Positions 3,024 to 36,854 of a stretch of DNA of 64,000 nt are shown piece after piece (position 1 is the stretch's first letter; the number at the start of each line of letters is the position of its first letter). The DNA comes from Ruditapes philippinarum (Eukaryota). The stretch spans positions 806,001 through 870,000 of the forward strand of contig NW_026855294.1 in assembly GCF_026571515.1 (NCBI RefSeq), in the 5' to 3' direction. The notes below the pieces were generated by a model. That model ran no database searches. It saw nothing but the letters and a program-made list of their open reading frames with translations, and was not told the DNA's origin. The translations under genes were made by a program, and so were the position numbers.

Positions 3024-3258
3024 GAGTCGTGTCATGACAAAACCAACATAGTGCATTTGTGACCAGCATGGATCCAGACCAGCCTGCACATCCGCGCAGT
3101 CTGATCAGGATCCATGCTGGTCGCTTACAAACCCTATAACAAGTAGAGAAACTGATAGCGAACAGCATGGATCCTGATCAGACTGCGCGGATGCGCAGGC
3201 TGGTCTGGATCCATGCTGGTCGCAAACCCATTATGTTGGTTATGTCATGACGCGGCTC
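3024..3258. mobile_element. Palindromic MITE, copy 2 (inverted relative to copy 1), ATTT target-site duplication
   Basis: Same TIRs as copy 1, with the central spacer reverse-complemented. Flanks read ATTT|GAG...CTC|ATTT. Confidence 0.85.
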
Positions 3259-11402: not shown

Positions 11403-12036
11403 GGTGAAGGCGAAAAGAGACAAAATATAGTGGTAAAATAAAATTGCAAATGTGATAATAATAAAGAAAATGATAATATTGACTTGAGCTCATGAAGAGA
11501 ATGTAAATTACAGACATATGATATGAAAACTTGATTTTGTATTATGGCATTGAAACATTTCAATGACTTTAAAATCAAGCAAAATATAGGGGGAAATGTC
11601 AAAAGCAAACATGTTTATCCAATGGTATGTTAGATGTAAGCAGTGATTTGTCTGTACTAGTAGTTTGAAAATATGCCAGTCTGTGCATAATTTCTGGCCT
11701 CAAACTATTGGCTGATTAGTTTTAGCCTTTTGTCTATCAAAATCCCTAACATCAATGAGCTGTAGTACCAAATGCAAATCAAGTACAAAATTAAGCAAGC
11801 AAATTGTGCGAGGTAAGGGTAAATAGGGGATCAAAATTTAATACTGGTTCTCTTGTTTGAAATGTAGTTCAGACCTTCAACTGATTTCTTTTACACTGAC
11901 TGCATTGTGCAGATAAATTTCTTAATTTTGTAATTCCCGAAAGGTTGAAACATATTCATATAGACTTCTCAGGTCAAAAGATGTTTAACTGTGTTTAACT
12001 GTAAAATTGTTTCCATTTCAGGTTAAAGGTTTAAAG

Positions 12037-14221: not shown

Positions 14222-14863
14222 GTATGGCTTTTAAGAAATGTTTTGATGATATAGTTAACAGTGACTTTTAAAGTAAAAACTGTTGTGGGAAAAAGAAAAC
14301 TTGTATGTTATATACGCAGTAATAGTACATTTGAGTGCTAACAACAAACTTATTGCTGCTTTGAGTCGTGGGTTTGAACCTTTTGCTTATAAGTATCATA
14401 TTCATGGAAGTTGCCATGACTGCTTTTGTCTGAAATTTATTTTGAAGGAGATGTTGATACTCTGTATATTAATTTAGTTTAATTTTTGTTTTTAATTTGA
14501 AGTTAAACTTATGTCTTGGATTTTAATGTTGTAAAGTATGGAAGAAATATATATGATGCAAATTACCATTACGTTAACGTTTTATCACCCCTTAGAGTGC
14601 TGGTGTCAATAATTACTTATTACTAAATATGACACTAGTATAGGGGCAAACTAACCTTACCTGTGAAGTTTTACCAAGCTCGAACCTGTTGGCTGTGCAC
14701 ATTTGTATTTTGATATTAATATGCTTGAAACAAATAATGGACTGCTCCAGATTGCAGACAAGGCAAAAAATTTTTTTTTTAATTTTGGTAATAAAATCGT
14801 TAATGAACAATTTGGGGCTTTGCTATCTCTATAAGTGTGTATATATTTTTCTGTCTATTATAG

Positions 14864-21379: not shown

Positions 21380-22861
21380 CTGTAAAAGAACAGTGTAAAA
21401 AAAAGTACAATGGTATACTAATAGATACCTTTATTTAAACAATATGTAACCTCTACTGTAAGACCACCTCCTTTGAAGATCTGTTTCAGTTAAATATTGA
21501 ACAAATATATTGCATTTCAGTTTTATTTTAACTTTTGCCTTGTGACCATCTTTTAAATAAAATTTGGAGTTTTATCTAACCACCACCTGTCTTAAAGGTC
21601 TGGTTCTTTCTATTTACAGTTTATATATTGTATTTAAAGTTTTATTAACCTTTGTCTTAAGACTACTGGCCATTATCATTTCAATTCAACGTAAAACAAA
21701 TATTATATATAATTGTATAACAGTTTATTCTAATCTCTGGATAAGGACCACCTGTATTAAACCAATTCAGTTTTGGTGTAAACATATTGTATGGAATAGT
21801 TAATTTAACCTCTAAAGACAACCTGCATTAAAAGACCACTATCCATATAATTCGAACACTGGTCTTTGTAGACAGGGATCTCTATAATCTAAGAATTATG
21901 ATTACAAAAGTCAGTAATTAGTGCAATTTATATGATATGTTAATTCCAATGTTTCCGTCTGCATTCACTTTCACGTGTTGGAGAACAATAAACTTTGAAG
22001 CGTAGGTTTTTATGTTGGGGATTTGCCTAGAATCCAATACATTGTACAAATGTCCATTTTATGACCAATTTTGATGGAAAATTGACACTTTTAATGGGAG
22101 AAATTTGTTATTTTAAGCGAAAATAATGAGTCTGTGTGAACATATTTTCATCAGTTTATTACTACACTGGAAGCCTGCAATTTCATATTTGTTATTATTT
22201 CCTGTAACTATTTATTATTATTTTCATAGCTTCATATAAAAATTTTATGAATTTCACTCGTGAATGAAGCGTATAGTTGCTAGTGGTCACGTGTCATGCC
22301 TTTTCATATTAGTAAATAAATGATTATTAAAAAAAAAAAAAAAAGAGGAGAAAAGAATGGAGAAACTTTTAATTTGATAAATATATCAGTGGTCCAATTT
22401 GAATCTCAATAATAAAATATAATGGTTATTAAAAATATAGAAAAAAAAGAAAATTATGATATTATTTTAAGGATGCATATCATAAGGACTGCATAGTAAA
22501 TTAAGTAAAAGTTAAATAAGTGTCACTGGAAGCCTTTCATTTACATGTATAGAGTAAAAGCAATATAAACTTCTAAAGGAACATTTTCCTGCACTCTTGT
22601 TTTTATAGAAACTATATAGAAACCTTTTTCAAGAACTAAAATTAACAATAAATTAAAAGATTAGGAGGGGAGAAAAACACATCAAATATATTTTAAGTAA
22701 ACTAATAAAGTGGTACAGAACAAAATAATATGCTGCTATTTTATTGAAGGTTTTATCAAGCAAAAATTTTCTGCTTTTTAACCAGGTTTTCAACGAAAAC
22801 CGGGTTATTGTAATGCCGAAGTCGGCGGGCGGGCGGGCGGGCGGGCTGGCGTCAACTTTTG

Positions 22862-23447
22862 GTTTCCGCTCAATAACTTTAGTTTGCTTAGGCCTATTGA
22901 CACCAAACTTGGTGTATGGGTAGCTTATATCAAGAGGCAGCTTGGGATTGCTACCCAGGTGTCTGTGATCAAGGTCAAGGTCACTGTTACTAAAAATAGA
23001 AATTCAGTTTCCGCTCAATAACTTTAGTTTGCTTTGGCCTATTGACACCAAACTTGGTGTATGGGTAGCATATATCAAGAGGCCGCTTGGGATTGCTACC
23101 CAGGTGTCTGTGATCAAGGTCAAGGTCACTGTTACTAAAAATAGAAATTCAGTTTCCGCTCAATAACTTTAGTTTTCTTTGGCCTATTGACACCAAACTT
23201 GGTGTGTGGGTAGCTTATATTAAGAGGCCGCTTGGGATTGCTACCCAGGTGTCTGTGATCAAGGTCAAGGTCACTGTTACTAAAAATAGAAATTCAGTTT
23301 CCGCTCAATAACTTTAGTTTTCTTTGGCCTATTTACACCAAACTTGGTGTATGGGTAGCTTATATCAAGAGGCAGCTTGGGATTGCTACCCAGGTGTCTG
23401 TGATCAAGGTCAAGGTCACTGTTGCTAAAATAGAAATTCAGTTTCCA
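22862..23447 (+). repeat. 4 x 145-bp tandem array inside the Helentron 5' region
   Basis: GTTTCC(GCTCAATAAC) recurs at 22862, 23007, 23152, 23297 and 23441. The copies are nearly identical. Confidence 0.95.
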
Positions 23448-24742
23448 TGTAATTGCTTCATTTTGCATGTATTGATTGTGTTGCTTTCAAATGAATGCTT
23501 TGTATCCATGTTGCTTTGTATCTGTAAATGTGTAGTACCCTTATATATCATGCATTTGTTACGGTGCCCTTGCTGAATTGATCAATATCCAATTATTGCA
23601 ATAGAAAACAAACTATCTGTCAAAAGAAATAAAGAAGCTAAAAGCTTATATTTAATCTATTTTATTTAATAATTACATCTGTATCAATTCAGCAAATGTG
23701 ACTTACCTCCTATAGGTGGGCACTGGAAACAAAACCACCTTACTAAAAGCTTGAGTGCAAATAGTCGCTTGTTGACATTGTCATTTAACCCCTGTTTGTT
23801 ATTGTGTGTTTGTATGTGAAGGCTGCGCATTATGCTAGTGTAGACATTGTTTCTTTAATAACTTTTTACATACATATTTAAAGAATATTTCAAAAAGAAT
23901 ATTTCTAATATACTTTTGCACTGTACTTTTGGCTAAATCTTCTTGCACTGAACAAGGGCATGGCTTAGTACTATTTAATGTGCGATATGTAACTGTAAAG
24001 TAAACATTTTCCATCTGCAATCACAGCATACTGCTTCTGCCTTTAAAACGCTAGTATACACACATTTGCATTCAAGCTTTATTATAATATTCTGTAGTTT
24101 GAACCTTATAGTAAGCACAGTAGTGTAGTTGGTGCAATGCATGTTCTTCATTTGATTTAAGAAATAGTTGTCTTTTGGACATGCTGGAAAGCACATCAAG
24201 ACACTTTTTCATTTTTCCACACAACCCTTATTAAATCGTAGCACAATCATTTAATATTACAAAAGTGACTGGTTTTATTTGCAAATGTCTGCATAAAACC
24301 TGTTAATGAAGTTAGACATGGTGGTGGTTTTGGCTAAAAGTCACTTTTACATAAATATTCCTTATTTTGTCTGCTCTAAACAAAAGATCTCTGCATTTTA
24401 TTTGATTTAAACTGCTGCATACATTGGTCAGTGTCTTTATTAGCATTTTGGTATTCAGTAAGTCCTCTGAAAAGCATGTTTATATAAAAGTGTATTTTGT
24501 TTAAAGCAGACAGTTTATAATCACAGTTCACATAGCAGCTTTATTTCTATTTCAGGCATCATTTGATTCTAACTTCATCATCATTATCTGTAATAAACCT
24601 TTCACTAACAGCTTTATTTCAGATAACACAGAATTTTATTTTTAAGATGGCAATAGATATGAATTCAGAGTAAACGTCCAACATTTACAAAGTTTTCCAT
24701 ATTATACACATATTACTTTGTATTTGCAGATAACATATAAAA

Positions 24743-25219
24743 ATGGCAAGTAACATTAATGATCTTAGAAAATTTATCTCAGAGTCTGTGTGTGATATTG
24801 ATATTCATTTGAAGGCAGCGGGATATGACATGTTTGCTGCTGATAGACAAGCAGGAACTCAGACCCTGGAATTGATTAGGAGTAAAGTAAAAGAAATGGA
24901 GGAGAAATCCAAGCAACGGATTTCAAACATTGAGAGGTCCATGCACTCTCTTGAGCACCAGCTTAGAGTGAAGGATCAGCGCAATTACCATCTGGAGAAG
25001 GCCAATGAACGGCTTACTGCTGAAAACAACAGGTTAAAGCAGGAATTGGATGACTTCTTTCCAACCATCGCAGACACAAGTATTCTTAATGTTAGCATGA
25101 ATGCCTCCCAGGATGATTCAGATGACAAGAGTGAAATTGCTGGCTCAAGTAGTCATTTTGGTGCCTGGCAGGATGATGTCAAGAGTGACACTCCAGACAA
25201 GAAACAGAAAACCGCATAG
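24743..25219 (+). CDS. Helentron accessory ORF: 158-aa orphan coiled-coil protein with an acidic tail and a C-terminal basic NLS-like motif
   Basis: AAAATGG start context with acceptor TTTGCAG ending at 24729. Higher GC than the flanks. Heptad pattern (LEHQLRVKDQRNYHLEKANERLTAENNRLKQEL) and PDKKQK near the C-terminus. Confidence 0.7.
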   Translation: MASNINDLRKFISESVCDIDIHLKAAGYDMFAADRQAGTQTLELIRSKVKEMEEKSKQRISNIERSMHSLEHQLRVKDQRNYHLEKANERLTAENNRLKQELDDFFPTIADTSILNVSMNASQDDSDDKSEIAGSSSHFGAWQDDVKSDTPDKKQKTA

Positions 25220-25652
25220 ACTGTTGTCTCTAATCATTTTGCACAAACATTATGTTAATAGATATTATACCTGAAAGCATCAGACTCATTTGTACCTGCT
25301 GAATACTTATGTTTGTATTGTTACATCAAGCAGATGAACTTAGTGGGAAAAAACATTTATCGTTGAAAATTTAGTGGGAAAAAACATTTATCGTTGAAAA
25401 TTTGTTTGAACTCTAAAACAGTGACTGTCTACGTGTTGATTAATTGATTGATTCTTTGTATTGCTTATATATTTTGTTTTGCATATTGCAGGCAAAAGGT
25501 GACTTGTATAGTTGCATACAGAAGGAGTGTATGTCTGTGATTTATTCACTTTATGTTAAGAAATGTTTGCTTGTTGTTAAAATTGTATATGTAAATTGTA
25601 AATTGTATATGTGTACTAATAGTTTTGAATAAATCTTTTTTCAGATTGAACA

Positions 25653-28600
25653 ATGCCTAAGTTGAAGAAAAAATCAGATAATCAAAAGCACGCCCAAGAC
25701 AGGGAGAGGAAGCGCAGGATTTCTTTACAAAATGTATCTCAAACTAGTGACACTGACACTTATCATAATGATATGAACACTGTTTCTGTTAATCAGTCAA
25801 CACAACATTTTGTTTTCAACGCTGTGGACTTAATGTGGCAAATTCAAAAGTGTCTGGATATAAATACACGTTTCAACAGTTCATTAAACATAATACAAAA
25901 TCTCCAAAGCAGAATATCTCAGGAAATTCATGAACCTACAATATGTATTAAAGTTAAAGGGGATGGAAACTGCTTTTTTCGATGTATTGCTTATGTGCTA
26001 TGTGGAGACGAAAGCTTTCATACCCAAGTTAGACAGACAGTGCTTTTACATATGTGCTCCAGTTCCCAGATACTAACTTCACTCTTGCCACCAAATACAA
26101 CCATGTCACAATACATAGCTAGGTCAAAGATGTCTGAAGATAAAGTATGGGCAACACAGGTTGAGATAATATCCACAGCTCACTTATTACAGACTGACAT
26201 ATATACATACTCAAAATATGGACATGAACTGAAATGGTTAAAACATACTGCACAGTTCGTAGACAATACACTCCAGATAAATGAAAAAGCAGTTTATTTA
26301 GACCACCATACAGGTATTCATTTTGATGTTGTACTTGATGTTGGAACATCAGTGTCTAGTGATTCTACAGCTGAAAAAACTTTTCTGTGGAGTGAATTGT
26401 TGAAGCAAGAAAGTCGGCAAATATACAATAAGTACTACAAGCAGGCCCAAAGACAATGTGCTGAGTACAAAAACAAAGAAAACAGAAGCAGGAATGAAGG
26501 ACGCTCTTCAAAAAGAACCAATAGTGAGTACAGACTGTTACAAAACCAGCGTAGGAATGAAACACGTTCTTCCAAAAGAACTGACACTGCATACAGACAC
26601 TCAGAAAACCAGCGTAGGAATGAAACACGCTCTTCCAAAAGAACCGACAGTGCATACAGACACTCGGAAAACCAGCGTAGGAATGAAACACGCTCTTCCA
26701 AAAGATCCGATAGTGCATACAGACACTCAGAAAACAAGCGTAGGAATGAAACACGCACTTTGAAAACTACCAGTAGTGACTACAGACAATTACAAAACAA
26801 GCGTAGGAATCAAACACGTTCTTTGAAAAGAACCGATAGTGACTACAGACACTTGGAAAACCAGGGTAGGAATCAAACACGTTCTTTGAAAAGAAACGAT
26901 AGTGACTACAGACATATGGAAAACCAGGGTAGGAATCAAACACGTTCTTTGAAAAGAACCAATAGAGACTACAGACATATGGAAAACCAGGGTAGGAATC
27001 AAACACGTTCTTTGAAAAGAACCAATAGAGACTACAGACATATGGAAAACCAGGGTAGGAATCAAACACGTTCTTTGAAAAGAACCAATAGTGACTACAG
27101 ACAGTCCGAAAATGAAGATAGAAATGAAAACCGTAAAAGAAAACGAAGCAATAGTCAATATAGACAAACAGAAAATGATCACAGAAAAAAATGGAGATCA
27201 TCGTCACATCGAAAGCAGAGAGAATTACTTTTAAAGCGTAAACAAAGGCAGAAAAAAAGGTCAGAGCAATCATCGCTACAAACACAAGTACAGCTATTCA
27301 ATGATCTTTTAAATAGAGGAGATGACTTTGTGTGTACAAGCTGCCAACAGACGTTTTACCAGCACAGTGTCTACACAGTGAGTAGAAAAAGTTTAATCAG
27401 GAAAGGAATATCACCCCAGTTTATAGACAAAGTGTTAACAGATTATAAGAGTGTTTTAAATTCAGAATGGATATGTAAAACCTGTTACAATTACATCTCA
27501 GATGAGAGAATGCCTCCAATGGCTGTTGCCAATGGGTTCTTACTTCCACACCTTCCAGATTCACTATCTTCTCTTAGTCCAACAGAAACAGAGGAGCGAT
27601 GTACAGCATTGAGGATCCCATTCATGCAACTGAAACAACTGGGCATTGGAAAACAGTTTGGCATCTATGGAAACACTGTTAATGTACCAATGAACCCCTC
27701 GAGTGTAGTGTCTATGCTCCCAAGAAGATTTGAACAAACAGAGACTATACACCTTCAGTTCAAGAGAAGACTTCAGTTTAAATCTTCAGTATATTATGAA
27801 ACAGTCAGGCCAAAGGTAATATATGACTTCACCAAATACTTTGTAGAAAACAGTGACTTATACAAAGAAGAGGGAGTTACATTGGATAATGAATGGTATA
27901 AAGAAGCACAGGACAAAAAAGAAATTTCCTTTTCTTCTGTGGAAGATATTGAAAATTTACAAACGGAAGACACTAACAAAGAAAAGCAGGAGAGTACTGA
28001 AGAGGATACTTGGAATGAATTGACCGAAGAAGAACAGGCAGGTGCAGGGAACAAGGACACCTTGATGCAAAATGTTGACTTTGCAGATGATGGTCTTCAT
28101 GCACTGCAGATAGCGCCTGGTGAAAAGAACCATCCAATAAGTCTATTTATGGACACTTTTGCTGAGGAGAAGTCTTTTCCTATCTTGTTTTGTGGCAAAA
28201 AAAGAATCGAAAATATTGAACGGACTGTACCAGTAACTTACAGTTCAATATGTAAAGCAGAGTTAAGGAATGTGGATACAAGATTCTCTAAATCCGTCCC
28301 AAATATGTTTTTCAAACTTAAAAAATTACAGGCATTGCAAGTAAGAGATTTGGCTACAACTGCTCTCAGAAAATCTAAGAATGTTTCATATACTGCGGGA
28401 GAACTGAAAATACCAGAAAACATTCAAAACATCCTACATCATGATGACGGATTTCGATTTCTAAAAACTCTTCGATCTTCTCCACCATACTATCAGACAA
28501 AACAAAAAGATTTGTTTGCCATGATCAACCAGCTAGGCTTGCCAACATTCTTTGCCACTTTCTCTGCAGCAGAAACAAGGTGGCCAGATCTGTTAAAACT

Positions 28601-31600
28601 TCTCTGTAAAAAGTCTGGCAAAACTGTTACTGAACAGGAAATAGTCAACCTGAACTGGATGGAAAAGTGTCAACTGATACAAAACAATCCAACCACATGT
28701 GCTAGACACTTCCATTACAGAACTAAGTTGTTTTTAAACAACTTCCTCACATCAGATATCTCACCTATTGGGAAGGTGGAAGATTTCTTTATCAGGGTGG
28801 AATTTCAACAAAGAGGGTCCCCTCATCTACACTGTTTGTTCTGGGTAAAGGATGCCCCTGTGTATGGCTCCTCTCCAGAAAAGGACATAATTGAATTCAT
28901 TGACAACAATATCAGCACAAGTTCTGATGTTCATGAAGATGCAAAACAGTTTGTACAGTTACAGATGCATCGCCATTCCCAGTCATGTAAGAAGAAAGGG
29001 AAAGAGATATGTCGATTTGGATTTCCCCTCCCACCAATGAAGGAAACTTTGATAATGGAACCATTTTCTTCTGACACGGAAAAGGAAGTTTTGAAAGCAG
29101 CCAAACAGAACTATGAGAAAGTACTGAAAGTGTTAAAAGCACTACCTAAGGATGCAGAACTAACATTTGATCAATTCATTGGACAGTGTGAGCTTACCTA
29201 CGACCAGTATCTTGGCGCTGTTAGGTCATCATTGAAGAGGAAACAGGTACTTCTGAAAAGAGCAGTGAAAGATGTGAGAATGAATGCATACAACTTGAAT
29301 GTATTAAAAATCTGGCAGGCAAACACAGACCTTCAGTATGTGCTAGATCCTTGGGGAGTTTGTGTGTATATTGCGAGTTACATCATGAAATCACAGAGAG
29401 GAATGAGCCTGCTTTTACAGAGAGCAACGGAGGAAGTGAAAAAAGGAAATTTAAAGCTAAGGGAGAAAGTCAGACACATCGCCAACAAGTTCTTAAATCA
29501 TTGTGAAGTCTCTGCCCAGGAAACCGTTTATTTGTTGCTACAGCTTCCTCTCACTCAGAGCTCAAGAAGTGTGATTTTTATAAATACCTCCCCACCAGAA
29601 AAACGTGTAGAAATTCTGAAGCCATTGTCACAAATAGAACATCTTCCTGATAGCTCTACAGATGTAACATGTTCTGGATTGATTGACAGGTATGCTGATA
29701 GACCAAAAATATTAGAACAGCTATGTTTAGCAGAGTTTGCCGCATTCTTTGAAAAAAAACCACGTTTAAAGAAAGAAACTGGAAAAGAAATTCCAACTGA
29801 AATAGATAACACAGACAACAATGTTGACATTGTAACACCAGGCACTGAGATCAAATTGGCAGATGGAAGTCGACTTGTACATCGCAAGACACCTAAAGTG
29901 ATACGCTATGTGAAATTCAATGTATCAAAAGACACAGAGATGTATTACAGAGAACAGCTGATGTTATTCTCACCTTTCAGGGAAGAAATGAAGCTAATGG
30001 GCACATCAGACAGTTTTGAAAGCCAGTATAAACTCTTAGAGGAAAAAATAACCAACAAACGCCATCAATTTCAGATTGGTACAGAAGGTATAGAAGAGGC
30101 TATGAATGCAGTATCAGAAGAAATGATCAATGATGAATTAGATGACATTGCACCAGTTGCCAGGCAGTCTGAAGAAGATGCCGTTTTACAAAAGGAAGAT
30201 CCTGTTTCCATGCTGCAACCTCCACATGAAAAATACAAGCACTTTGATATAGGGTCTTTTAAAGACTCACCAGAAGCAAATACTCGGGGATGCATTATCC
30301 AGAACAGAGTGTCAAATGAAGATTTTTTCTCTATGGCAGTGTCTTTGAATGAAGAGCAAAAGAAGTTTTTTTATGAAGCATTACACAGAATTAAGACAAC
30401 AACTGAACCATTTTACTTCTTCCTTTCCGGTGGAGCAGGAGTTGGAAAATCCCATGTACTTAAGACCATTTATCAGGCCTTGGTTCGTTATTTTGACAGT
30501 GTCCCAGGCGAAAATCCTGATGACATCAAGGTTGTTATTGCTGCACCAACTGGTAAAGCAGCGTACAATGTACATGGGAATACGCTGCACAGCCTTCTTG
30601 ACATTCCACCCAGCAATGCTTTGAGATCTTATATACCACTTAGTAATAGCACTCTCAATACCTTGCGCAGCCGTTTTTACAAGCTAAGAGTTTTAATCAT
30701 TGATGAAGTATCTATGGTCGGAGTCAACCTCTTTAATTTTGTATGTAGCAGACTGCAACAAATCTTTGATTCCACCAAGCCATTTGGAGGTATTTCACTA
30801 ATTCTTGTTGGAGATCTCTTTCAGCTGAGACCAGTTGGTGATTCATGGATTTTTGAGAATGATTCTGTTCAATATGGTCCATTATTGAGAAACCTTTGGC
30901 AGGACCTAGTCCAGCTGTATGAACTGACAACCATAATGAGACAGAAGGATGATGCCATATTTGCATGCTGTCTCAACCGCATTAGAGAGGGAAAGCAGAC
31001 AAAGGAAGACATAGATCTTATTGCATCAAGGCTATGTACCAAGGAAGACACTAATCAGTGTATTCACTTGTTTAGCACCAACCACCTGATTGACGAACAC
31101 AATCAACAAGTGTTATCATATAAGGAAGGACTGACATTCATTTCTGTTGCTGTGGACTATATACAAGGTGATGTGTCTGTTAAAGACAGGACAGCAGTTT
31201 TAGACTTTGTTAAACACTTAGAAGTTAGGAAAACTCAGAATTTGAGATTTGAACTCCAACTTAAAGAATCTGGAAACTACATGCTAACACACAATATCAG
31301 CACAGCAGATGGATTAACCAATGGTGCCAGTTGTCAAATAGAAATGGTTCAATGTTTTAATAATATACCGACAGTAGTATGGGTCAAATTTCAGCCAAAT
31401 GAAATAGGATCAGTCACAAGACAGGAACATAAGCACTTGTATGCATACAGTTCTGCAATTCACAAATCATGGACACCAATACAAAAAATCCAAAAAGAAT
31501 TTCAAACATCCAAAAACAGCAAAGTAAAAATAGTGAGAAAACAGTTTCCTCTGCAGGCAGCAGAAGCCATATCTATTCACAAATCTCAAGGTTCAACTCT

Positions 31601-32435
31601 TGATGAAGCAGCTGTGTCCTTCAGAGGTAGAATTCAGAAACACATGGTCTATGTAGCATTAAGTAGAGTCAGAACTTTAAAAGGACTTAAACTTCTTGAC
31701 TTTGATCCTAAGAAGATTACTGTTGATTATCTTGTTCAGCAAGAAATGCTAAGAATGCGGAATGAATCATCATTGCAGTGCACACAGTTCTGTCTTCCAA
31801 AGTCAAATTTTACAGTTGCATGTCATAATTCAAGGTCACTTCACAAGCATATCAACCAGTACAGGAACGACACAAGACTCACTGATGTTGATGTCCTGGT
31901 TTTACAAGAAACATGGGCATTAAAGGATGACTATAAACACCATTACCACCTGAATACTTTTCAGGATCCCTATTGCATCTACACAGAAATTGATCGGAAG
32001 AGACCACACTCTGGAACATTCATATATGTTAAAATAGGGCTTAACATTGTATCTAGTGTTCAGGCAACAGAGCCTGGCCTGGAAAGTGCATGTCTTCTGA
32101 TAGAAAAGAATGGACACCAGTTTGAAATCATAAGTGTATATTGCCATCCACCTGGAAACACATCTAAAGTTTGTAAAACAGTACAAACACTCAGAACTCG
32201 AACAGTGCCATGCATTATAATGGGAGACTTTAACATTGACCACTTACACCTCTCAAAAAGTGAGAAATTATGTCAGTTCATGGAAAGACATTTGAAAGCA
32301 AAGCCACAGATCTCTGATGAAACAACAGATTACCATTCCCTACTGGATCAGATATACTCTTCAAAACCAGCCATAAGTGCAGGAGTCCTTGAAACTGTTT
32401 GGAGTGACCATAAGATTGTGTGGGCAGCCATATAA
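25653..32435 (+). CDS. Helentron RepHel polyprotein (OTU cysteine protease, 21-aa repeats, Zn-finger, HUH Rep, PIF1-family SF1B helicase, AP-endonuclease), 2260 aa
   Basis: OTU motifs GDGNCFFR...WAT..EI...HFD. Zn motif CTSC...CKTC. HUH motif VEFQQRGSPHLHCLFW and catalytic YIASYIMK. Helicase motifs GGAGVGKS, IIDEVSM, GDLFQL, MRQ, SIHKSQG, YVALSR. EEP/APE motifs HNSRSL, LQETW, GDFN, LDQIY, SDH. No stops or frameshifts. Confidence 0.96.
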   Translation: MPKLKKKSDNQKHAQDRERKRRISLQNVSQTSDTDTYHNDMNTVSVNQSTQHFVFNAVDLMWQIQKCLDINTRFNSSLNIIQNLQSRISQEIHEPTICIKVKGDGNCFFRCIAYVLCGDESFHTQVRQTVLLHMCSSSQILTSLLPPNTTMSQYIARSKMSEDKVWATQVEIISTAHLLQTDIYTYSKYGHELKWLKHTAQFVDNTLQINEKAVYLDHHTGIHFDVVLDVGTSVSSDSTAEKTFLWSELLKQESRQIYNKYYKQAQRQCAEYKNKENRSRNEGRSSKRTNSEYRLLQNQRRNETRSSKRTDTAYRHSENQRRNETRSSKRTDSAYRHSENQRRNETRSSKRSDSAYRHSENKRRNETRTLKTTSSDYRQLQNKRRNQTRSLKRTDSDYRHLENQGRNQTRSLKRNDSDYRHMENQGRNQTRSLKRTNRDYRHMENQGRNQTRSLKRTNRDYRHMENQGRNQTRSLKRTNSDYRQSENEDRNENRKRKRSNSQYRQTENDHRKKWRSSSHRKQRELLLKRKQRQKKRSEQSSLQTQVQLFNDLLNRGDDFVCTSCQQTFYQHSVYTVSRKSLIRKGISPQFIDKVLTDYKSVLNSEWICKTCYNYISDERMPPMAVANGFLLPHLPDSLSSLSPTETEERCTALRIPFMQLKQLGIGKQFGIYGNTVNVPMNPSSVVSMLPRRFEQTETIHLQFKRRLQFKSSVYYETVRPKVIYDFTKYFVENSDLYKEEGVTLDNEWYKEAQDKKEISFSSVEDIENLQTEDTNKEKQESTEEDTWNELTEEEQAGAGNKDTLMQNVDFADDGLHALQIAPGEKNHPISLFMDTFAEEKSFPILFCGKKRIENIERTVPVTYSSICKAELRNVDTRFSKSVPNMFFKLKKLQALQVRDLATTALRKSKNVSYTAGELKIPENIQNILHHDDGFRFLKTLRSSPPYYQTKQKDLFAMINQLGLPTFFATFSAAETRWPDLLKLLCKKSGKTVTEQEIVNLNWMEKCQLIQNNPTTCARHFHYRTKLFLNNFLTSDISPIGKVEDFFIRVEFQQRGSPHLHCLFWVKDAPVYGSSPEKDIIEFIDNNISTSSDVHEDAKQFVQLQMHRHSQSCKKKGKEICRFGFPLPPMKETLIMEPFSSDTEKEVLKAAKQNYEKVLKVLKALPKDAELTFDQFIGQCELTYDQYLGAVRSSLKRKQVLLKRAVKDVRMNAYNLNVLKIWQANTDLQYVLDPWGVCVYIASYIMKSQRGMSLLLQRATEEVKKGNLKLREKVRHIANKFLNHCEVSAQETVYLLLQLPLTQSSRSVIFINTSPPEKRVEILKPLSQIEHLPDSSTDVTCSGLIDRYADRPKILEQLCLAEFAAFFEKKPRLKKETGKEIPTEIDNTDNNVDIVTPGTEIKLADGSRLVHRKTPKVIRYVKFNVSKDTEMYYREQLMLFSPFREEMKLMGTSDSFESQYKLLEEKITNKRHQFQIGTEGIEEAMNAVSEEMINDELDDIAPVARQSEEDAVLQKEDPVSMLQPPHEKYKHFDIGSFKDSPEANTRGCIIQNRVSNEDFFSMAVSLNEEQKKFFYEALHRIKTTTEPFYFFLSGGAGVGKSHVLKTIYQALVRYFDSVPGENPDDIKVVIAAPTGKAAYNVHGNTLHSLLDIPPSNALRSYIPLSNSTLNTLRSRFYKLRVLIIDEVSMVGVNLFNFVCSRLQQIFDSTKPFGGISLILVGDLFQLRPVGDSWIFENDSVQYGPLLRNLWQDLVQLYELTTIMRQKDDAIFACCLNRIREGKQTKEDIDLIASRLCTKEDTNQCIHLFSTNHLIDEHNQQVLSYKEGLTFISVAVDYIQGDVSVKDRTAVLDFVKHLEVRKTQNLRFELQLKESGNYMLTHNISTADGLTNGASCQIEMVQCFNNIPTVVWVKFQPNEIGSVTRQEHKHLYAYSSAIHKSWTPIQKIQKEFQTSKNSKVKIVRKQFPLQAAEAISIHKSQGSTLDEAAVSFRGRIQKHMVYVALSRVRTLKGLKLLDFDPKKITVDYLVQQEMLRMRNESSLQCTQFCLPKSNFTVACHNSRSLHKHINQYRNDTRLTDVDVLVLQETWALKDDYKHHYHLNTFQDPYCIYTEIDRKRPHSGTFIYVKIGLNIVSSVQATEPGLESACLLIEKNGHQFEIISVYCHPPGNTSKVCKTVQTLRTRTVPCIIMGDFNIDHLHLSKSEKLCQFMERHLKAKPQISDETTDYHSLLDQIYSSKPAISAGVLETVWSDHKIVWAAI
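26463..27200 (+). repeat. Coding 63-bp (21-aa) tandem repeat, ~11-12 units, inside RepHel
   Basis: Consensus xYRHxENQxRNxTRSxKRTxS. GTAGGAAT recurs with a 63-bp period (26551, 26614, ...). Confidence 0.92.
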
Positions 32436-32894
32436 GTTACAAAGTACATCAATACGGTACATGTATTATTATTAAGAATTACTAGCTGGGTTTGTTTCGG
32501 CCACTACACAAACATGTATGAATCAGTAATTTGCATATGGGGAAAAATTGGACTGAAATTACTGACTCCTTATATATCTGTGTAATGTCAGGAACAAGCC
32601 TTATAATTGATTTATTTCATCAACCACTTTTCCTAATCATTTATTTATTTCAGTGTTTCACCATATCCTTAGTACTAAACCTGTATGATTTCTACTAACC
32701 CTACATAATGAGATCACAATCTGCATGCAACCAAAATAATGGCATCATGTGTTTTCTTCACTCCCATCTTTTATTTTTCATTCTGTCAAATCAATACTTG
32801 GACGTTGAAAACCTGGTTTCGTCGCATTGCGGCGCTTCTTGTTCTCTTTTGTTCTGTTTACAGTTAGATGGCCCCCTATCCCTATTCGGTAGTG

Positions 32895-32945
32895 GGGACG
32901 GACAAAGCGGCTACTATATGCTCACCCTTAGGGGAGCATAAAAAT
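32895..32945 (-). mobile_element. Isolated 5' terminus of another HINE-like element
   Basis: GACGGAC remnant, TATGCTC-ACCC-TTA-GGG-GAGCATA hairpin and AAAA, the same layout as the termini at 35171, 52804, 56322 and 62835. Confidence 0.5.
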
Positions 32946-33964
32946 CTATTTACATCAGTGTGGTGACCTTGACCAAAAGTAGACCTTTACCAAAAGTTAC
33001 CACCCAAGATGTCTACAAAATATTAAAGACATCAGTCATTTAATAAAGGCTGTATAAGCAAGACAGCACTGGTAACCTTGACCCCTTGTCTTTCCAAAAT
33101 TACAAGACCACTGAAGGTCTATACCAATCAAACATGAACATCATCAATTAATAAAACCTGTTTAAGCAAAAGTGTAGAGGTCTATTTTGAGCAATGGTGA
33201 CCTTGAACTTAGTGGCCCTAACTCATCATAAAGTTTGAGGATTACTCAAGGGATCTACTCACCAAATATAAAAGGCAACAGCTTGTAAATAAGGCTTCAT
33301 AAGCAAATTGTTTCAATCCATTTCTAGCAAGGATGGTCTTGTTCAATTTACCCCCAAAGTTAGATAACCTCCAAAAGTAAGTATTATATAGGGAGATAAT
33401 TAAAAAAAAAAAAGTTAGGCAGAATAATGGTTCTTGCATGGACACTGCACTTCCTATCACTGGCTGAAGATTTAATCAAGTTCTTTCAACATTTTTTATT
33501 CTCCAAACAAGTGCATTTACATTATAAAGGAATGCCATTCAAAATCTAAGTAATGTATTATGTAGAGTAATTGTTCTTTGACAATGCATTTCTTCTCACA
33601 TGTCTATAATTATGAGAAATTTCAATGCATCATTGATTACTGTTTATACTCTGAACTATCATTATTTACTCAAGGGAATATATTAAAAAGTTATGGCATA
33701 GTAGATTTATTTCAATCTATAATCCAGACTAGAGCATTATAGACATCTACATTTTTCTTTTACTTTCTTCTTATTTTTTATTATTATTTTTTTGTTAATA
33801 GAACACATATATCATGCCTACTTCCTCATGTTGTCCTTTTTAAATTATAAACCACAGCTATTTTTTCATTTGCAAAATTTGTAAAGCAGAAATGTTATAA
33901 TGGTGAAATATAAATAACTATTAATTACCAGTCTGCTGTTTGACATTTTTATGACAAAGGAAAA

Positions 33965-35171
33965 CAAGAGGGCCATGATGGCCCTGAAATCACTCACCTG
34001 TATATAGGCCCCTAGGCCAAGGCCAATTTTAAACCAGGGGCTTTTATTTGACAAACTTGGAAGACACCCATTAGAAGATGTTTCATGATAAATATCTAAG
34101 CTCTAGCTCTTTGGGGTTTATATCAGAAGAGTTTTAAAGTTTTTACTATATACATATAGGGTAAAACAATACCCCCATCACAGAGGGGCCAATTTTGACC
34201 CCAGGGCTTTTATTTGAACAAACTTGGTAGACACTCACTAGAAGATATTTCATGCTAAGTCTCTAAACTAGCTCTTTGGGTTTTTTATAAGAAGATTATT
34301 TAAGTTTTTACTATACACAAATAAGGAAAATCAATGACCCCTGGGGCGGGCCAATTTTAACCCAAGGGCCCTTATTTGAACAAACTTGGTAGACACCCAT
34401 TAGAAGATGATTCATGCGAAATATCTTAGCTAGATCTTTGGGGTTTTTAAAAGAAGATTTTTTAAGTTTTTACTATATACATATAGGGAAAAACAATGAC
34501 CCCCTGGGGCTTGGCCAATTTTTATCCCAGGGCTTTTATTTGAACAAACTTGGTAGACACCCATTAGAAGATGTTTCATGCTAAATATCTTAGCTCTAGC
34601 TCTATGGGGTTTTTAAAAGAAGATTTTTTTAAAGTTTTTACTATATACAAAATCAGGAAAATCAATGACCCCCTGGGGTTCAGCCAATTTTTACCCCAGG
34701 ATATTTATATGTACAAGCTTGGTAGACACCCACCAGTAGATGTTTAATGCTTAATATCTTAGCTCTAGCTATTTGGGGTTTTTAAAAGAAGATTTTTTAA
34801 GTTTTACTATATACAAATAAGGAAAATCAATGACCCCAAGGGGCGGGACCAATTTTGACCCCAGGGCATTTATTTGAACAAACTTGGTAGAAACTGACTA
34901 GATGATGTTTCATGCCAAATATTTAAGCTCTAGCTCTTATGGTTTTCTGAAAGAAGATATTTTAAGTTTTTTCTTTCGGATGCCATGGCTTGGAATTAAA
35001 TTCTTTGAACAATTTTTAAAATTGACTACCAAAGGAACATTCCTGTGGAGTTTGGATGAAATTTGCTTAGCGGTATATGAGGAGATGTCGTTTAAAGTAA
35101 AAGTTTACGGACGGACGCCGGACGAAAAGCGATCACAAAAGCTCACCATGTCACTTTGTGACAGGTGAGCT
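33965..35171 (-). mobile_element. Non-autonomous Helentron-type element (HINE/DINE-like) with a ~6 x 165-bp array
   Basis: The low-coordinate end has AA|CAAG, an AGGGCCAT-G-ATGGCCCT hairpin and CTCACCTG. The other end has GACG repeats and a GCTCACC...TGTCAC/GTGACAGGTGAGC fold-back followed by TAAAAA. CCAATTTT recurs every ~165 bp. Confidence 0.88.
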
Positions 35172-35381
35172 AAAAATATTAACAAACACACATAATTGTT
35201 TAACATTTTTTATTGATACATAATAAAAATTTTGACTTAAGAAGTCAAAAAAAGCACAATAAAGCTCAAAATAACCTTGAACTTTGCTCAAACATGAACT
35301 TTTTGAACATTGTTCAAGAAATAAAACATAGAAATAAAGGCAGATGTGCAAAACTAATATATGATTTGATGTAAATAAATA

Positions 35382-36854
35382 CAGGCTGTCCAGCACCTTC
35401 TAACAAAAAATTAGGGCAAATTTTAGGGCAATTTTAAAGAAAATTTAGGGCTAAAATTAGGAATTTTAAGGTAAATAAAGGAAATTTTAGGGCTAAAATT
35501 TGGAATTTTATAACTAAATTATGGCCTCAAAAGACCATGATAATTGGGCTCAACTTTACACATTTGATATAAAAGTAACTCACAAATAATGCTCTAGTTC
35601 AGTTATAGCACAGGTGTAACCAGTGTTCCATAGTCACCAGTGAAGGAATGGATTTATTGGTCAACTGCCTTTAAAAAGAGCTGAAAAACTACATTAAAAC
35701 TTAACTAGAATGAAAGCATTTTCAAAGTTGTAAGTATCCCTGAACAACCAATATTCAATTAATTAAGCTATGATTAGCCAATAATAAATGGAAGGGGAAA
35801 TTATGCTTTAGATTATTTTAGCTATAAATGCATTTCTTATTAACATTTATTCATTTTAAGGTTAATTGGTACATTTTCAACAAGTCTTGATCTTTCTTAA
35901 AAAAACAATAAAAACGATATGACCCACTCAAGTCATTCCCAGGAATATTTAAACTTATATTCAAACAGCAGGGTATACATCTATGATGAATTTGTTCAAG
36001 ATAAATCAGGCTACTCAAAATTGTAGAAAATTTCACAACAGTGTCAGTTTATTCAATGATTTTCAACAGTTTTTTTCCAGATTTTAAAAAACTTACACTA
36101 TATGTTTATTTGTTATAACATATGTTCAGTACATGTTAATGTGTACAAAAAGGGCAGCTGAAGGTGTTAAAATGGTAAAAGCATCCAATCATTACTGCCA
36201 GTTTACCTTACCCACTTTATAATAAGCAAATATAAAAACTTGTTTAGATCTGCCAGCTGGTATCACTTACAAAAGATCTGTTCCAGTCATCACTTGACAA
36301 TAACTTGATTACAAATTAAGATTTTATTGATACGAACCCTTACATAAAGTTTGATGAAATTTAGTGGTTCATCATGTAAATAGTTGCTTTAAATACACCT
36401 AAGACTTAGGTAAATGGCAAAACTCTGTAGCCAATAAAAATGTAACTTCCTTGGAAATTTTTTTATCACAATTTTAAACAGGTCACTATTTTGATATAGT
36501 CAAAGTCGGACAATTTCCATTGTTCCATTTAAAACAAACAGTGTCTTATTATTTTTCTGATAACATCTGACAATCAAGTATAGCATTTCTACATACTAAG
36601 TAAATACAACATGTGACTTCATGCAATTTAGTCAGACATGACATCAGTTCCACTGAATGTGTTCGAATTTAGGTTGTGATTGAAACATGGTTGTTTCGTG
36701 ATGTTTATCACAAAAGATAAAAAAAATAGGAATTTTAGTGAAAAAATAGGGCTTTTTTAGGAATTCCCTTTGAATTTTTCATTTTTTTAGGAATTTTAGC
36801 CAAACTGAAAAAAATTAGGATTTTTTAGGAATTTTAGGGACGCTGGACAGCCTG
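35382..36854. mobile_element. 1.47-kb non-autonomous DNA transposon with 13-bp TIRs, a 6-bp TSD and TTTAGG subterminal repeats
   Basis: CAGGCTGTCCAGC ... GCTGGACAGCCTG with TAAATA on both sides. Clusters of (A)ATTTTAGG(G) lie near both ends. Confidence 0.8.

What the first reader, a model, noticed from the sequence alone, without database searches (positions are those of the whole stretch)
22780..32841. Intact, possibly active autonomous Helentron that also has the full DINE/HINE terminal architecture
Seen: perfect 16-bp subTIRs, a 5' fold-back, a (GGCG)n microsatellite, a tandem array, a 3' hairpin, insertion at a TT site, and an uninterrupted 6.8-kb ORF retaining the recognisable catalytic motifs (OTU Cys/His, HUH plus two Tyr, Walker A/B, APE N/E/D/H). 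Known: the subTIR-microsatellite-array-hairpin layout is mainly described from short non-autonomous HINE/DINE-1-like elements. Inference: this is a young master element linking that layout to its transposase, and a candidate for reconstituting Helentron transposition.
Basis: partly seen in the sequence, partly recalled or inferred. Interest (0 to 1): 0.8.

Follow-up and report, generated by a model that had tools for sequence, protein, structure and literature searches.

The report
Intact Helentron transposon with HINE-type ends
This is a complete, coding-intact rolling-circle transposon (a Helentron) in a mollusc genome. It has the same ends, microsatellite and satellite-like repeat array as about 300 short non-coding copies, so it is a good example of a known kind, but it has not been shown to be young or mobile.

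Summary
Window 22780-32841 has a perfect 16-bp subterminal inverted repeat, a 5' fold-back, a (GGCG)n microsatellite, a 145-bp x4 array and a short 3' hairpin. It also has an open 2260-aa frame with OTU, DUF6570, Rep (Helentron-type GSPHLH), Pif1 helicase and AP-endonuclease domains.

Twenty-four short HINE copies examined end at exactly the same bases, flanked by TT on the left and T on the right. The 45-nt 5' end occurs 314 times in the 1.41-Gb assembly.

- Autonomous Helentrons sharing HINE ends have been known since 2014.
- At least 14 other intact Helentron frames exist in this genome.
- This is the only intact copy of its subfamily. Its closest relatives (74-91% identity) are dead.
- Its 3' end differs from all examined HINEs at fixed positions, so it is not their direct parent.
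- No empty site was found.
- Its two flanks belong to different repeats, and the only twin of the 3' flank (contig C85) does not give a simple insertion picture.

In favour of function, variants in other individuals are biased toward synonymous changes, and RNA-library contigs cover the gene. One variant carries a stop codon.

Verdict: new member of a known kind, of moderate interest.

The parts
22778..22779 (+). Conserved TT directly left of the 5' subTIR. It is either the host T of the T^T target plus the element's first T, or two element Ts. This leaves the 5' boundary uncertain by 1-2 nt.
   Evidence: TT in 23 of 24 HINE copies and in the window; position -3 is variable. Thomas 2014 (PMC4067079) states that strings of Ts at the boundaries are part of the element.
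22780..22795 (+). 5' subterminal inverted repeat, AACCAGGTTTTCAACG.
   Evidence: Perfect 16/16 complement of 32803-32818. It is identical in the HINE copies examined. The 45-nt 5' end occurs 314 times in the genome, against 0 for the control.
22779..22807 (+). 5' fold-back (the IR of DINE-1 type). AACCAGGTTTT pairs with AAAACCGGGTT, and its 5' arm is nested in the subTIR.
   Evidence: DNA fold -9.2 kcal/mol, z -3.77, 0 of 200 shuffles as good.
22824..22851 (+). (GGCG)n tetranucleotide microsatellite, 7 units with one mismatch.
   Evidence: Read. Its length varies among HINE copies.
22862..23446 (+). Central tandem array, 145 bp x 4.0.
   Evidence: TRF 97% matches. It is 96.9% identical to HINE arrays, which are 97.7% alike among themselves.
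23447..24742 (+). Non-coding 5' internal region, specific to autonomous copies. It presumably holds the promoter and 5' UTR.
   Evidence: Found only in the dead paralogues at 73-81% identity (C2641, C12542, C10206, C2453) and absent from HINEs.
24743..25219 (+). ORF1: a 158-aa coiled-coil accessory gene of unknown function.
   Evidence: Only weak sub-threshold Pfam matches to coiled-coil families. A 73%-identical homologue lies at C2641:90710-91185, upstream of that dead paralogue's Rep region. Further homologues lie at C12542 and C11302.
25340..25403 (+). 31-bp x 2.1 direct repeat between the two ORFs. Each unit contains CGTTGAAAA, the first 9 nt of the 3' subTIR.
   Evidence: TRF 100%; inverted-repeat pair I3 with the 5' end. 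Its significance was not tested.
25653..32435 (+). ORF2: a 2260-aa OTU / basic repeat / DUF6570 / Rep / Pif1 helicase / AP endonuclease polyprotein, uninterrupted.
   Evidence: There are 632 relatives with the same layout, the best at 45-47% identity.
25956..26333 (+). OTU cysteine protease domain, with catalytic Cys in GDGNCFFRC and His in GIHFDVV.
   Evidence: PF02338, E 3.4e-8; motifs located.
26490..27103 (+). In-frame 63-bp x 9.7 repeat encoding a basic 21-aa unit between OTU and DUF6570.
   Evidence: TRF; translation.
28272..29390 (+). Rep (HUH-Y2) nuclease domain: VEFQQRGSPHLH at aa 1049-1060 and Y-x3-Y at aa 1239-1243.
   Evidence: PF14214, E 7.9e-28. GSPHxH is the Helentron-diagnostic form according to PMC4067079.
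30345..31004 (+). Pif1-like SF1 helicase core with Walker A (GGAGVGKS) and Walker B (LIIDE).
   Evidence: PF05970, E 4.9e-25.
31821..32420 (+). C-terminal apurinic/apyrimidinic-type endonuclease domain, the feature that defines Helentrons.
   Evidence: PF03372, E 3.9e-8, and PF14529, E 8.9e-7; N, E, D/N and DH motifs located.
32803..32818 (+). 3' subterminal inverted repeat, CGTTGAAAACCTGGTT.
32820..32834 (+). 3' hairpin, CGTCGC-ATT-GCGGCG, ending 7 nt before the element's end.
   Evidence: Predicted (weak, z -0.05). Conserved in 24 of 24 HINEs.
32835..32841 (+). 3' terminus, CTTCTTG. The next base (32842) is the conserved flanking T.
   Evidence: The same end is present in 24 of 24 HINE copies with unrelated flanks. 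The autonomous-type last 59 nt occur only here and at C8222:310271-310329.
32842..32945 (-). Not part of the element. It is the 5' module (palindromic subTIR plus a GTCC-type microsatellite) of a different, very abundant HINE family ('R'), cut off where it meets the Helentron's 3' end.
   Evidence: The complete R copy lies at the twin locus C85:34803 to about 35915.

Best explanation
Window 22778/22780-32841 is a full-length autonomous Helentron, an endonuclease-encoding rolling-circle DNA transposon, in a mollusc genome. It carries two genes: a small coiled-coil ORF1 and a 2260-aa OTU-Rep-Pif1 helicase-AP endonuclease protein.

Its ends have the complete HINE/DINE-1 layout:
- a conserved T or TT,
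- a 16-bp subTIR nested in a 5' fold-back,
- a tetranucleotide microsatellite,
- a 145-bp array,
- the 3' subTIR,
- a short hairpin,
- the terminal CTTCTTG.

Likely mechanism, inferred from the Helitron/Helentron literature and not tested here:
1. The HUH-Y2 Rep domain recognises the subTIR and hairpin structures and nicks one strand at the two ends.
2. The Pif1-type helicase unwinds the element.
3. A single-stranded or circular intermediate is inserted at T-rich sites (T^T) without target-site duplication.
4. The roles of the AP endonuclease, OTU and ORF1 are unknown.

The roughly 300 short HINEs keep an identical 5' 45 nt, the same subTIR and the same hairpin. They are the non-autonomous partners that a protein of this family would move in trans. 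They look like deletion derivatives that lost everything between the array and the last roughly 60 nt.

Shown here: anatomy, domains, shared boundaries, copy numbers, an intact frame, a synonymous-biased set of variants, and presence in RNA libraries.

Inferred: that this particular copy is, or recently was, transposition-competent (my estimate 0.3-0.4), and that it rather than a lost sibling serves the HINEs.
For: Domains and motifs:
- Domain order and catalytic motifs are complete in one open frame.
- The Helentron-diagnostic GSPHxH motif is present.

Boundaries and family size:
- Ends are identical to those of 24 HINEs at different loci.
- There are 314 genomic copies of the 45-nt 5' end, at least 100 of them perfect, against 0 for the control.
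- HINE-HINE identity is 97-98%.
- By the Thomas 2014 rule the element and the HINEs are one family and subfamily: the subTIR is 16/16 identical and the last 58 nt are about 91% identical.

Accessory gene:
- ORF1 is conserved at the same relative place in paralogue C2641.

Selection on the frame:
- Against the intact C12560 lineage, pN is 0.23 and pS 0.84.
- Among near-identical versions in other individuals there are 17 synonymous, 14 non-synonymous and 1 stop change. The expected synonymous fraction is 25%, giving P = 6e-4.

Expression and other copies:
- Contigs from an RNA library cover 28838-32832 at 98-99% identity, while the unique flank 33100-33299 has no coverage.
- A second locus (C8222) carries the last roughly 182 nt at about 100% identity.
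Against: - It is the only intact copy, and the only copy above 91% identity, of its subfamily in the assembly.
- The nearest paralogues are dead.
- Its 3' end carries five differences that are fixed against all 24 HINEs, whereas its 5' 45 nt are identical to them. It is therefore not the HINEs' direct source, and its 5' part may have a separate history.
- No empty site was found. The left flank (single copy, ending in one repeat family) and the right flank (the 5' module of HINE family R) do not join into any sequence seen elsewhere.
- The only twin of the right flank, C85, continues leftwards with the rest of R and with unique DNA that is absent from the window.
- The version of the ORF in run X14 has a stop at codon 1162, and frameshifted relatives exist.
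- RNA evidence comes from assembled contigs only: there is no strand, start or level information, and those contigs are 1-2% different from this copy.
Confidence: 0.85

Rival explanations
1. The copy as assembled is a recombinant or chimera. Its first roughly 670 bp (5' end, microsatellite, array) and its left flank come from an ordinary HINE. The join to the autonomous body was made either by ectopic recombination in the genome or by collapse of the repeat during assembly. Under this reading the locus is not a simple insertion and may not be a mobile unit as it stands.
For: - The 5' 45 nt are 100% identical to the HINEs and the array is 96.9% identical, inside the HINE-HINE range of 96.0-98.6%. 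The 3' 58 nt are an outlier at about 91%, with fixed differences.
- The left flank shows no trace of the R sequence that the right flank and its twin C85 would predict.
- About 300 near-identical 5' modules are available as recombination or mis-join partners.
Against: - The array is followed without a break by autonomous-specific sequence. Paralogues C2641 and C10206 start matching within 15-65 nt of the array's end. That is what is expected if the ancestral autonomous element had an array at this place.
- The asymmetry rests on only 58 nt, with about 2 differences expected and 5 seen.
- 5' ends may simply be under stronger constraint.
Confidence: 0.2
2. The mobile unit was larger than 22780-32841. 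A Helentron sitting inside an R copy at a C85-like locus read through its 3' end and carried the downstream flank (R's 5' module plus at least 2.6 kb) to the present locus, that is, 3' transduction. The C85 contig would then be the insertion-free version of the donor site.
For: - Homology with C85 (98%, 2554 bp) starts within 0-7 nt of the family's 3' end and nowhere upstream.
- C85 has the complete R where the window has only R's 5' module.
- C85's upstream 4.8 kb is unique in the assembly.
- From my own knowledge, capture of flanks by read-through is the classic Helitron behaviour.
Against: - C85 is a 38-kb contig with 98% identity and a TE presence/absence difference (window 35382-36860). 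That pattern is also what a leftover haplotig looks like in a highly heterozygous mollusc.
- No donor copy (a Helentron inside R) was found.
- The far end of the duplicated block lies beyond the end of C85, so no second boundary or new terminator can be shown.
Confidence: 0.1
3. It is an old, fixed and now immobile insertion whose frame has stayed open by chance or through recent gene conversion. The HINE family was amplified by other, now lost or unassembled, autonomous copies.
For: - It is a single copy with dead close relatives.
- Fixed 3' differences separate it from the HINEs.
- It is present, with 0.3-0.8% differences, in DNA runs of several studies.
- A nonsense variant exists in X14.
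Against: - An open 6.8-kb frame is very unlikely to persist without selection.
- The variants are significantly enriched for synonymous changes.
- RNA-library contigs cover the gene.
- C8222 carries an identical 3' end at another locus.
Confidence: 0.3
4. It is a host gene domesticated from a Helentron rather than a transposon.
For: A long intact frame under purifying selection that is single-copy.
Against: - It keeps both transposon ends in the family's exact form.
- A nonsense allele segregates.
- The best relatives in other species are only 45-47% identical. They form a large multi-copy family rather than a set of orthologues.
Confidence: 0.03

Closest known systems
Autonomous Helentrons and their HINE partners (Thomas, Vadnagara & Pritham 2014, PMC4067079), for example Helentron-Mo-1A/HINE-Mo-1A in the mite, Helentron-Cq/HINE-Cq in Culex, and the Drosophila partners of DINE-1
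   Same: - Rep-Pif1 helicase-AP endonuclease in one frame, with the GSPHxH signature.
- subTIRs of more than 11 bp, a 5' IR nested in the subTIR, and a short 3' stem-loop a few nt from the end.
- Ts at the boundaries and T-rich/TT insertion sites.
- Much more numerous non-autonomous partners that share the ends.
- OTU as an optional domain.
   Different: - Here the autonomous element itself carries the microsatellite and a 4-unit satellite-like array.
- The subTIR starts 0-2 nt from the 5' end, and the 3' subTIR ends only 23 nt from the 3' end (the paper gives 38-60 nt from the 3' termini for the mite).
- There is an extra coiled-coil ORF1 in place of RPA.
- The host is a mollusc.
Bivalve HINEs that carry satellite-like repeats: Cg_HINE of Crassostrea gigas (Vojvoda Zeljko et al. 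2020, PMC7492417), the pearl family, and DTC84 of Donax trunculus (PMC3879986)
   Same: Left module with subTIR plus IR, a tetranucleotide microsatellite, one to several central repeats of about 145-170 bp, a right module with subTIR plus palindrome, and TT (reported there as AA) at the ends.
   Different: Those are non-autonomous. For C. gigas the authors state that they could not relate any of 10 autonomous Helentrons to the Cg_HINEs. Here a coding element and its HINE family share both modules and the array. I could not compare sequences with those published families.
Canonical Helitrons, including the reconstructed bat element Helraiser
   Same: HUH-Y2 Rep fused to a Pif1-like helicase, a 3' hairpin near the end, no target-site duplication, and a rolling-circle/circular-intermediate mechanism assumed.
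   Different: There is no 5' TC or 3' CTRR and no A^T target. It has subTIRs, an AP endonuclease and an OTU domain. No Helentron has been shown to transpose experimentally, as far as the papers read here say.
Helitron2 (asymmetric terminal inverted repeats), as summarised in PMC4067079
   Same: The 5' end is complementary to a sequence just upstream of a 3' hairpin, and insertion is at TT.
   Different: Helitron2 proteins lack the C-terminal endonuclease.

Membership tests
Helentron (endonuclease-encoding rolling-circle transposon) | Rep domain with an HUH motif and two catalytic tyrosines | tested here: met
   PF14214, E 7.9e-28. HLH lies in VEFQQRGSPHLH at aa 1049-1060, and Y-IAS-Y at aa 1239-1243.
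Helentron (endonuclease-encoding rolling-circle transposon) | Helentron-diagnostic residues at Rep motif 2: S between G and P in (V/I)ExQxRG(S/L)(P/L)HxH, preceded by F/Y-x-R | tested here: met
   FFIR-VEFQQRGSPHLH. The criterion was read in PMC4067079.
Helentron (endonuclease-encoding rolling-circle transposon) | Pif1-like SF1 helicase downstream of Rep in the same frame | tested here: met
   PF05970, E 4.9e-25; Walker A and B present.
Helentron (endonuclease-encoding rolling-circle transposon) | AP-type endonuclease fused to the C-terminus of the helicase | tested here: met
   PF03372, E 3.9e-8, and PF14529, E 8.9e-7, at aa 2061-2256 in the same open frame.
Helentron (endonuclease-encoding rolling-circle transposon) | Subterminal inverted repeats plus a short 3' palindrome shared with non-autonomous partners | tested here: met
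   16/16 subTIR. The hairpin at 32820-32834 is conserved in 24 of 24 HINEs.
Helentron (endonuclease-encoding rolling-circle transposon) | Insertion within TT without target-site duplication, confirmed by empty sites | tested here: inconclusive
   Flanks are TT...T in 23-24 of 24 copies and no duplication is visible. No empty site was recovered for this copy or for a HINE. The only twin of the 3' flank (C85) is not a simple empty site.
Helentron (endonuclease-encoding rolling-circle transposon) | Phylogenetic placement of Rep/helicase in the Helentron clade | not tested
   No tree was built. All top relatives have the Rep-PIF1-Exo_endo_phos layout.
HINE / DINE-1 terminal architecture | 5' IR whose 5' arm is nested in the subTIR | tested here: met
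   Fold-back at 22779-22807, z -3.8.
HINE / DINE-1 terminal architecture | Short microsatellite followed by central tandem repeats between the two end modules | tested here: met
   (GGCG)7 at 22824-22851; 145 bp x 4.0 at 22862-23446.
Same family and subfamily as the roughly 300 HINEs (rule of Thomas et al. 2014) | [quoted passage not shown] | tested here: met
   The subTIR is 16/16 identical. The last roughly 58 nt are about 91% identical, with 5 fixed differences including a 1-nt indel. The rule was read.
Direct master copy of the HINE family | Ends identical or nearly identical to the HINE majority at both termini | tested here: not met
   The 5' 45 nt are identical, but the 3' end differs from all 24 HINEs at fixed positions. 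The autonomous-type 3' end occurs only twice in the genome.
Canonical Helitron | 5' TC and 3' CTRR ends, with insertion between A and T | tested here: not met
   The ends are (T)TAACC... and ...CTTCTTG, and the flanks are T and T.
Active (currently transposing) element | Insertion polymorphism, identical copies at several loci, or experimental transposition | tested here: inconclusive
   There is one full copy only. One other locus has an identical 3' 182 nt. Contig-level read data could not bridge the junctions. No experiment was possible.

The most novel reading that the evidence does not exclude
This would be the living autonomous partner of a roughly 300-copy, satellite-carrying HINE family in a mollusc, caught in a transposase-linked rearrangement. 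In that reading its 3' end sits inside another HINE, and either a read-through transduction or an adjacent deletion removed the rest of that HINE. That would give the first directly testable system for two questions: how Helentrons move, and how they seed and spread satellite-like arrays and reshuffle flanking DNA in bivalve-type genomes.
Probability: 0.15. Interest if true: 0.6.

Novelty: new member of a known kind. Interest (0 to 1): 0.35.

Why it matters
Helentrons and their HINE derivatives are among the most abundant repeats in molluscs and insects. They are thought to spread satellite-like arrays, yet no Helentron has been shown to transpose. For oysters, the published survey could not pair any autonomous element with the HINEs.

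This locus gives a concrete pair in one genome. The coding element carries the same end modules, microsatellite and array as its short partners, and the protein frame is intact and under selection. That makes it a reasonable natural starting point for expression studies and for an ordinary transposition assay.

Its value is limited in three ways. The class and its architecture are already described, many other intact Helentron frames exist in this same genome, and neither youth nor mobility of this copy is demonstrated.

Tried and rejected
Searches for an empty site:
- I searched both 600-bp flanks separately in the whole assembly.
- The left flank is single-copy.
- The right flank has one twin (C85), which turned out not to be a simple empty site.

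Checks on whether C85 is allelic:
- C85's upstream 5.8 kb has no other match.
- A search with C85:20001-30000 was swamped by a high-copy repeat and told nothing.

Read evidence for the junctions:
- Only Logan contigs were available.

Paralogue and C8222 sequence:
- I could not read C8222, or the DNA upstream of C2641:89458 and C10206:18172.

- The protein Atlas could not take ORF1.

Negative searches:
- An exact 45-nt search for the 5' junction in JGI metagenome contigs found nothing.
- Rfam found nothing in 22000-37000.
- NCBIfam added only RecD/TraA-like helicase similarity.

Rejected or unsettled ideas:
- Some HINE matches extend 20-30 nt beyond the array. I asked whether they prove shared internal sequence. 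The extension is only a decayed next monomer, so it does not settle whether the array is native to the autonomous copy.
- The two 753-754-aa ORFs on either side of the element are not an inverted pair; they are unrelated.

I did not run the large representative-protein search, because the family scans and the word search left nothing open. 

Full report
WHAT IS THERE

A single open frame runs from 25653 to 32435 (+), 2260 codons without a stop. Pfam places the domains in this order:
- OTU protease, aa 102-217
- DUF6570, aa 618-747
- Helitron_like_N (Rep), aa 874-1062
- PIF1 helicase, aa 1565-1784
- Exo_endo_phos (AP-type endonuclease), aa 2061-2253

The catalytic motifs can be read in the translation:
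- OTU Cys (GDGNCFFRC) and His
- Rep motif VEFQQRGSPHLH and a Y-x3-Y pair
- Walker A (GGAGVGKS) and Walker B (LIIDE)
- the N, E, D/N and DH motifs of the endonuclease

GSPHxH, with S between G and P, is the form that Thomas et al. 2014 give as diagnostic of Helentrons rather than Helitrons (PMC4067079).

The terminal features are as follows:
- The 16-bp subTIR AACCAGGTTTTCAACG (22780-22795) has a perfect reverse complement at 32803-32818.
- The 5' end folds back on itself over 22779-22807 (-9.2 kcal/mol, z -3.8).
- A (GGCG)7 microsatellite lies at 22824-22851.
- A 145-bp x 4.0 array lies at 22862-23446.
- The 3' hairpin (32820-32834) is only a 6-bp stem and is not better than shuffled sequence. 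It is conserved in every family member examined.

A second gene, ORF1 (24743-25219, 158 aa, coiled coil, no family match), lies upstream of the large frame. A 73%-identical homologue sits at the same relative position in a dead paralogue on contig C2641, so ORF1 belongs to the element.

THE FAMILY IN THE GENOME

The window is C3781:806001-870000 of a 1.41-Gb, 15,874-contig assembly. The sequencing-run labels point to a mollusc.

Short non-coding copies (1.0-1.7 kb) consist of the first roughly 670 bp of the element (end module, microsatellite, 3-8 monomers) joined to its last roughly 60 bp. In 24 such copies at different loci:
- the sequence starts at the same AACCAGG and ends at the same CTTCTTG;
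- the two bases on the left are TT in 23 of 24;
- the first base on the right is T in 24 of 24;
- everything beyond is unrelated.

The 45-nt 5' end occurs 314 times with at most 3 mismatches, at least 100 times perfectly, and 0 times for the reversed control. The HINEs are 97-98% alike among themselves.

By the 2014 classification rule the coding element and the HINEs are one family and one subfamily. [quoted passage not shown]

In the HINEs, the sequence just upstream of the 3' subTIR looks like a decayed monomer. The HINE is thus, in effect, array plus ends. The coding region of the autonomous element lies between the array and that last partial monomer.

IS IT YOUNG, AND IS IT THE MASTER?

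Evidence against:
- The coding part has no second copy. A search with 27300-32700, in which all 34 candidates were scored, returned only itself at 100%. The next hits were C2641, C2997 and C10206 at 77-91%, C4282 at 80%, and C12560 at 66-69%.
- The first four of these are riddled with stops and frameshifts.
- The autonomous-specific 5' internal region (23447-25652) exists only in those dead relatives, at 73-81% identity.
- The element's last 58 nt differ from all 24 HINEs at five fixed positions, including a 1-nt indel. Its first 45 nt are identical to them, and its array falls within the HINE range. The HINEs did not derive from this copy.
- This copy is also not exceptional. C12560 holds a different intact Helentron (2247-aa frame, 70% identity in Rep-helicase). 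At least 13 further loci have uninterrupted frames of 1.6-2.6 thousand codons across the whole Rep-helicase region.

Evidence for function:
- The exact autonomous-type 3' end (59 nt) occurs once more, at C8222:310271-310329. Upstream of it, C8222 matches window 32660-32700 at 100%. A second locus therefore carries the last roughly 182 nt essentially unchanged, without the ORF.
- Fourteen DNA runs from eight studies hold 77-92% of the sampled words of 27300-33400.
- When laid on the window, contigs of X2 are identical, those of X9 differ by about 0.3%, and those of X14 by about 0.8%.
- Of the 32 listed substitutions inside the frame, 17 are synonymous, 14 non-synonymous and one is a stop (K1162*, X14). 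Given the change types, 25% synonymous is expected, so P = 6e-4. The versions in the population have therefore diverged under selection for an open, functional frame, although at least one is now broken.
- Against the C12560 lineage, pN is 0.23 and pS 0.84.
- Contigs from an RNA-seq library (X15) cover 28838-32832 at 98-99% identity and share variants with X14. The unique flank at 33100-33299 has no coverage in that library. This argues for transcription rather than DNA carry-over. Contigs give no strand, ends or level.

THE FLANKS DO NOT GIVE A SIMPLE INSERTION

The 600 bp to the left are single-copy. Their last roughly 90 bp resemble a dispersed repeat.

The first 103 bp to the right (32842-32945) are the 5' module of a different and extremely abundant HINE family, here called R. 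It lies on the minus strand and has a palindromic subTIR and a GTCC-type microsatellite.

The rest of the right flank has one twin, on the 38.5-kb contig C85:
- C85:35806-38350 matches window 32835-35381 at 98%.
- The window then has a 1479-bp repeat (35382-36860; 605 first-look candidates in the genome) that C85 lacks.
- The last 126 nt of C85 match 36861-36986.

In C85 the R element is complete and is preceded by 4.8 kb of unique DNA. None of this is in the window. Relative to C85, the Helentron therefore replaces the first roughly 1 kb of R and everything upstream, and the breakpoint lies within 0-7 nt of the family's 3' end.

Three readings fit:
- C85 is the other haplotype. In the window's haplotype an insertion into R was followed by, or accompanied by, a rearrangement on the 5' side. 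One possibility is ectopic recombination with another family member, given about 300 near-identical 5' modules.
- The element was copied together with its downstream flank from a C85-like donor site (3' transduction).
- The contig is mis-joined inside the repeated 5' module.

I could not separate these readings. What the comparison does show is that 32841/32842 is a real joint at the family's 3' end.

COMPARISON WITH WHAT IS KNOWN

That premise is out of date.
- Thomas et al. 2014 identified full-length Helentrons with exactly these end structures in mite, mosquito, Drosophila and Nematostella.
- The same paper showed that HINEs/DINE-1 are their deletion derivatives with more than 95% identity.
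- It noted T strings at the boundaries and TT targets, and listed OTU as an occasional domain.
- The protein has 632 relatives at E <= 1e-20 among the candidates scored. Hundreds are full length with the same OTU/DUF6570/Rep/PIF1/endonuclease layout, in gastropods, oysters, mussels, scallops, clams, corals and sea cucumbers. The best is only 45-47% identical.

One thing is less well covered for molluscs.
- The satellite-carrying HINEs (pearl, DTC84, Cg_HINE) are well described (PMC3879986, PMC7492417).
- For C. gigas the authors could not relate any autonomous Helentron to them.
- Here a coding element and a HINE family share both end modules, the microsatellite and the array within one genome.

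VERDICT

The identification as an intact autonomous Helentron with full HINE-type ends is secure.

It is a new member of a known kind. It is useful as a natural autonomous/non-autonomous pair in a mollusc and is a reasonable object for expression and transposition tests.

The claims 'young' and 'master' are not supported by the data obtained. The locus has an unexplained flank structure that should be resolved with long reads before the copy is treated as a clean insertion.

The earlier notes of this scan on the same window (ORF1, the 21-aa repeat, the array) and on another piece (a HINE sharing the 3' terminus) agree with what I found.

Noticed in passing
window 32842-32945 (- strand); complete copy at C85:34803 to about 35915 (L059/L064): A second, far more abundant HINE family ('R', 9433 first-look candidates). 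It has a palindromic 5' subTIR (ATGCTCCCCTAAGGGTGAGCAT), a GTCC-type microsatellite, a central array, and a 3' end (...GGGAGCAT CACCAGGTTCAACCGGTTCTTGTT). The hairpin of that 3' end resembles the 5' fold-back of the Helentron family studied here.
   Followed up: partly
window 35382-36860: A 1479-bp interspersed repeat (605 first-look candidates, copies 83-92% identical). It is present in the window but absent from the 98%-identical twin contig C85, so it is a presence/absence difference between the two.
   Followed up: partly
G000:C8222:310271-310450 (- strand): The only other place in the genome with the autonomous-type 3' end. The last roughly 182 nt of the element are about 100% identical there, but there is no ORF and no 5' internal region.
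   Followed up: partly
G000: C12560:4424-7231, C3192, C11722, C4213, C14516, C14714, C14040, C7999, C102, C6060, C14149 and others: At least 14 further loci have uninterrupted frames of 1.6-2.6 thousand codons spanning the whole Rep-helicase region (36-70% identity to this protein). The genome holds a diverse set of apparently intact Helentrons.
   Followed up: partly
window 25340-25403: A perfect 31-bp x 2.1 direct repeat lies between ORF1 and ORF2. Each unit contains CGTTGAAAA, the first 9 nt of the 3' subTIR. It could be an internal Rep-binding or pseudo-end site, or chance.
   Followed up: no
window 29086 and 33111 (read laying, table 5c): Contigs in three DNA runs (X2, X9, X14) join 29086 to 33111 with the same 32-40 foreign letters between. 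This could be a deletion allele of this locus or an unrelated locus that combines a paralogue fragment with the partly repeated 33.1-kb region. It remains unexplained.
   Followed up: no
window 26490-27103: An in-frame 63-bp x 9.7 tandem repeat encodes a basic 21-aa unit (RNETRSSKRTDSAYRHSENQR-like) between the OTU and DUF6570 domains. The dead paralogues also match this part repeatedly.
   Followed up: partly
window 50439-52722, 62027-62751, 54865-56257, 34021-34971, 3956-5382, 57814-58819: Six further tandem arrays lie in the same 64 kb, with periods of 145, 145, 166, 165, 50 and 69 bp. The two 145-bp arrays are related to each other (60-73%) but were not compared with the Helentron array. 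They are probably central repeats of other HINE families.
   Followed up: no
window 1684-1921 and 3022-3259: A 238-nt inverted repeat pair, 93% complementary and 1.1 kb apart. The same 240-bp unit occurs twice on C85 at 85-92% identity. It looks like a foldback or MITE-like repeat.
   Followed up: no
window 12007-14271 (+) and 43768-46029 (-): Two long open frames of 754 and 753 aa lie on opposite strands either side of the element. They have strong opposite base skews and are unrelated to each other. The first has a weak CYTH-domain match (E 1.4e-6). They are probably large exons of host genes.
   Followed up: partly
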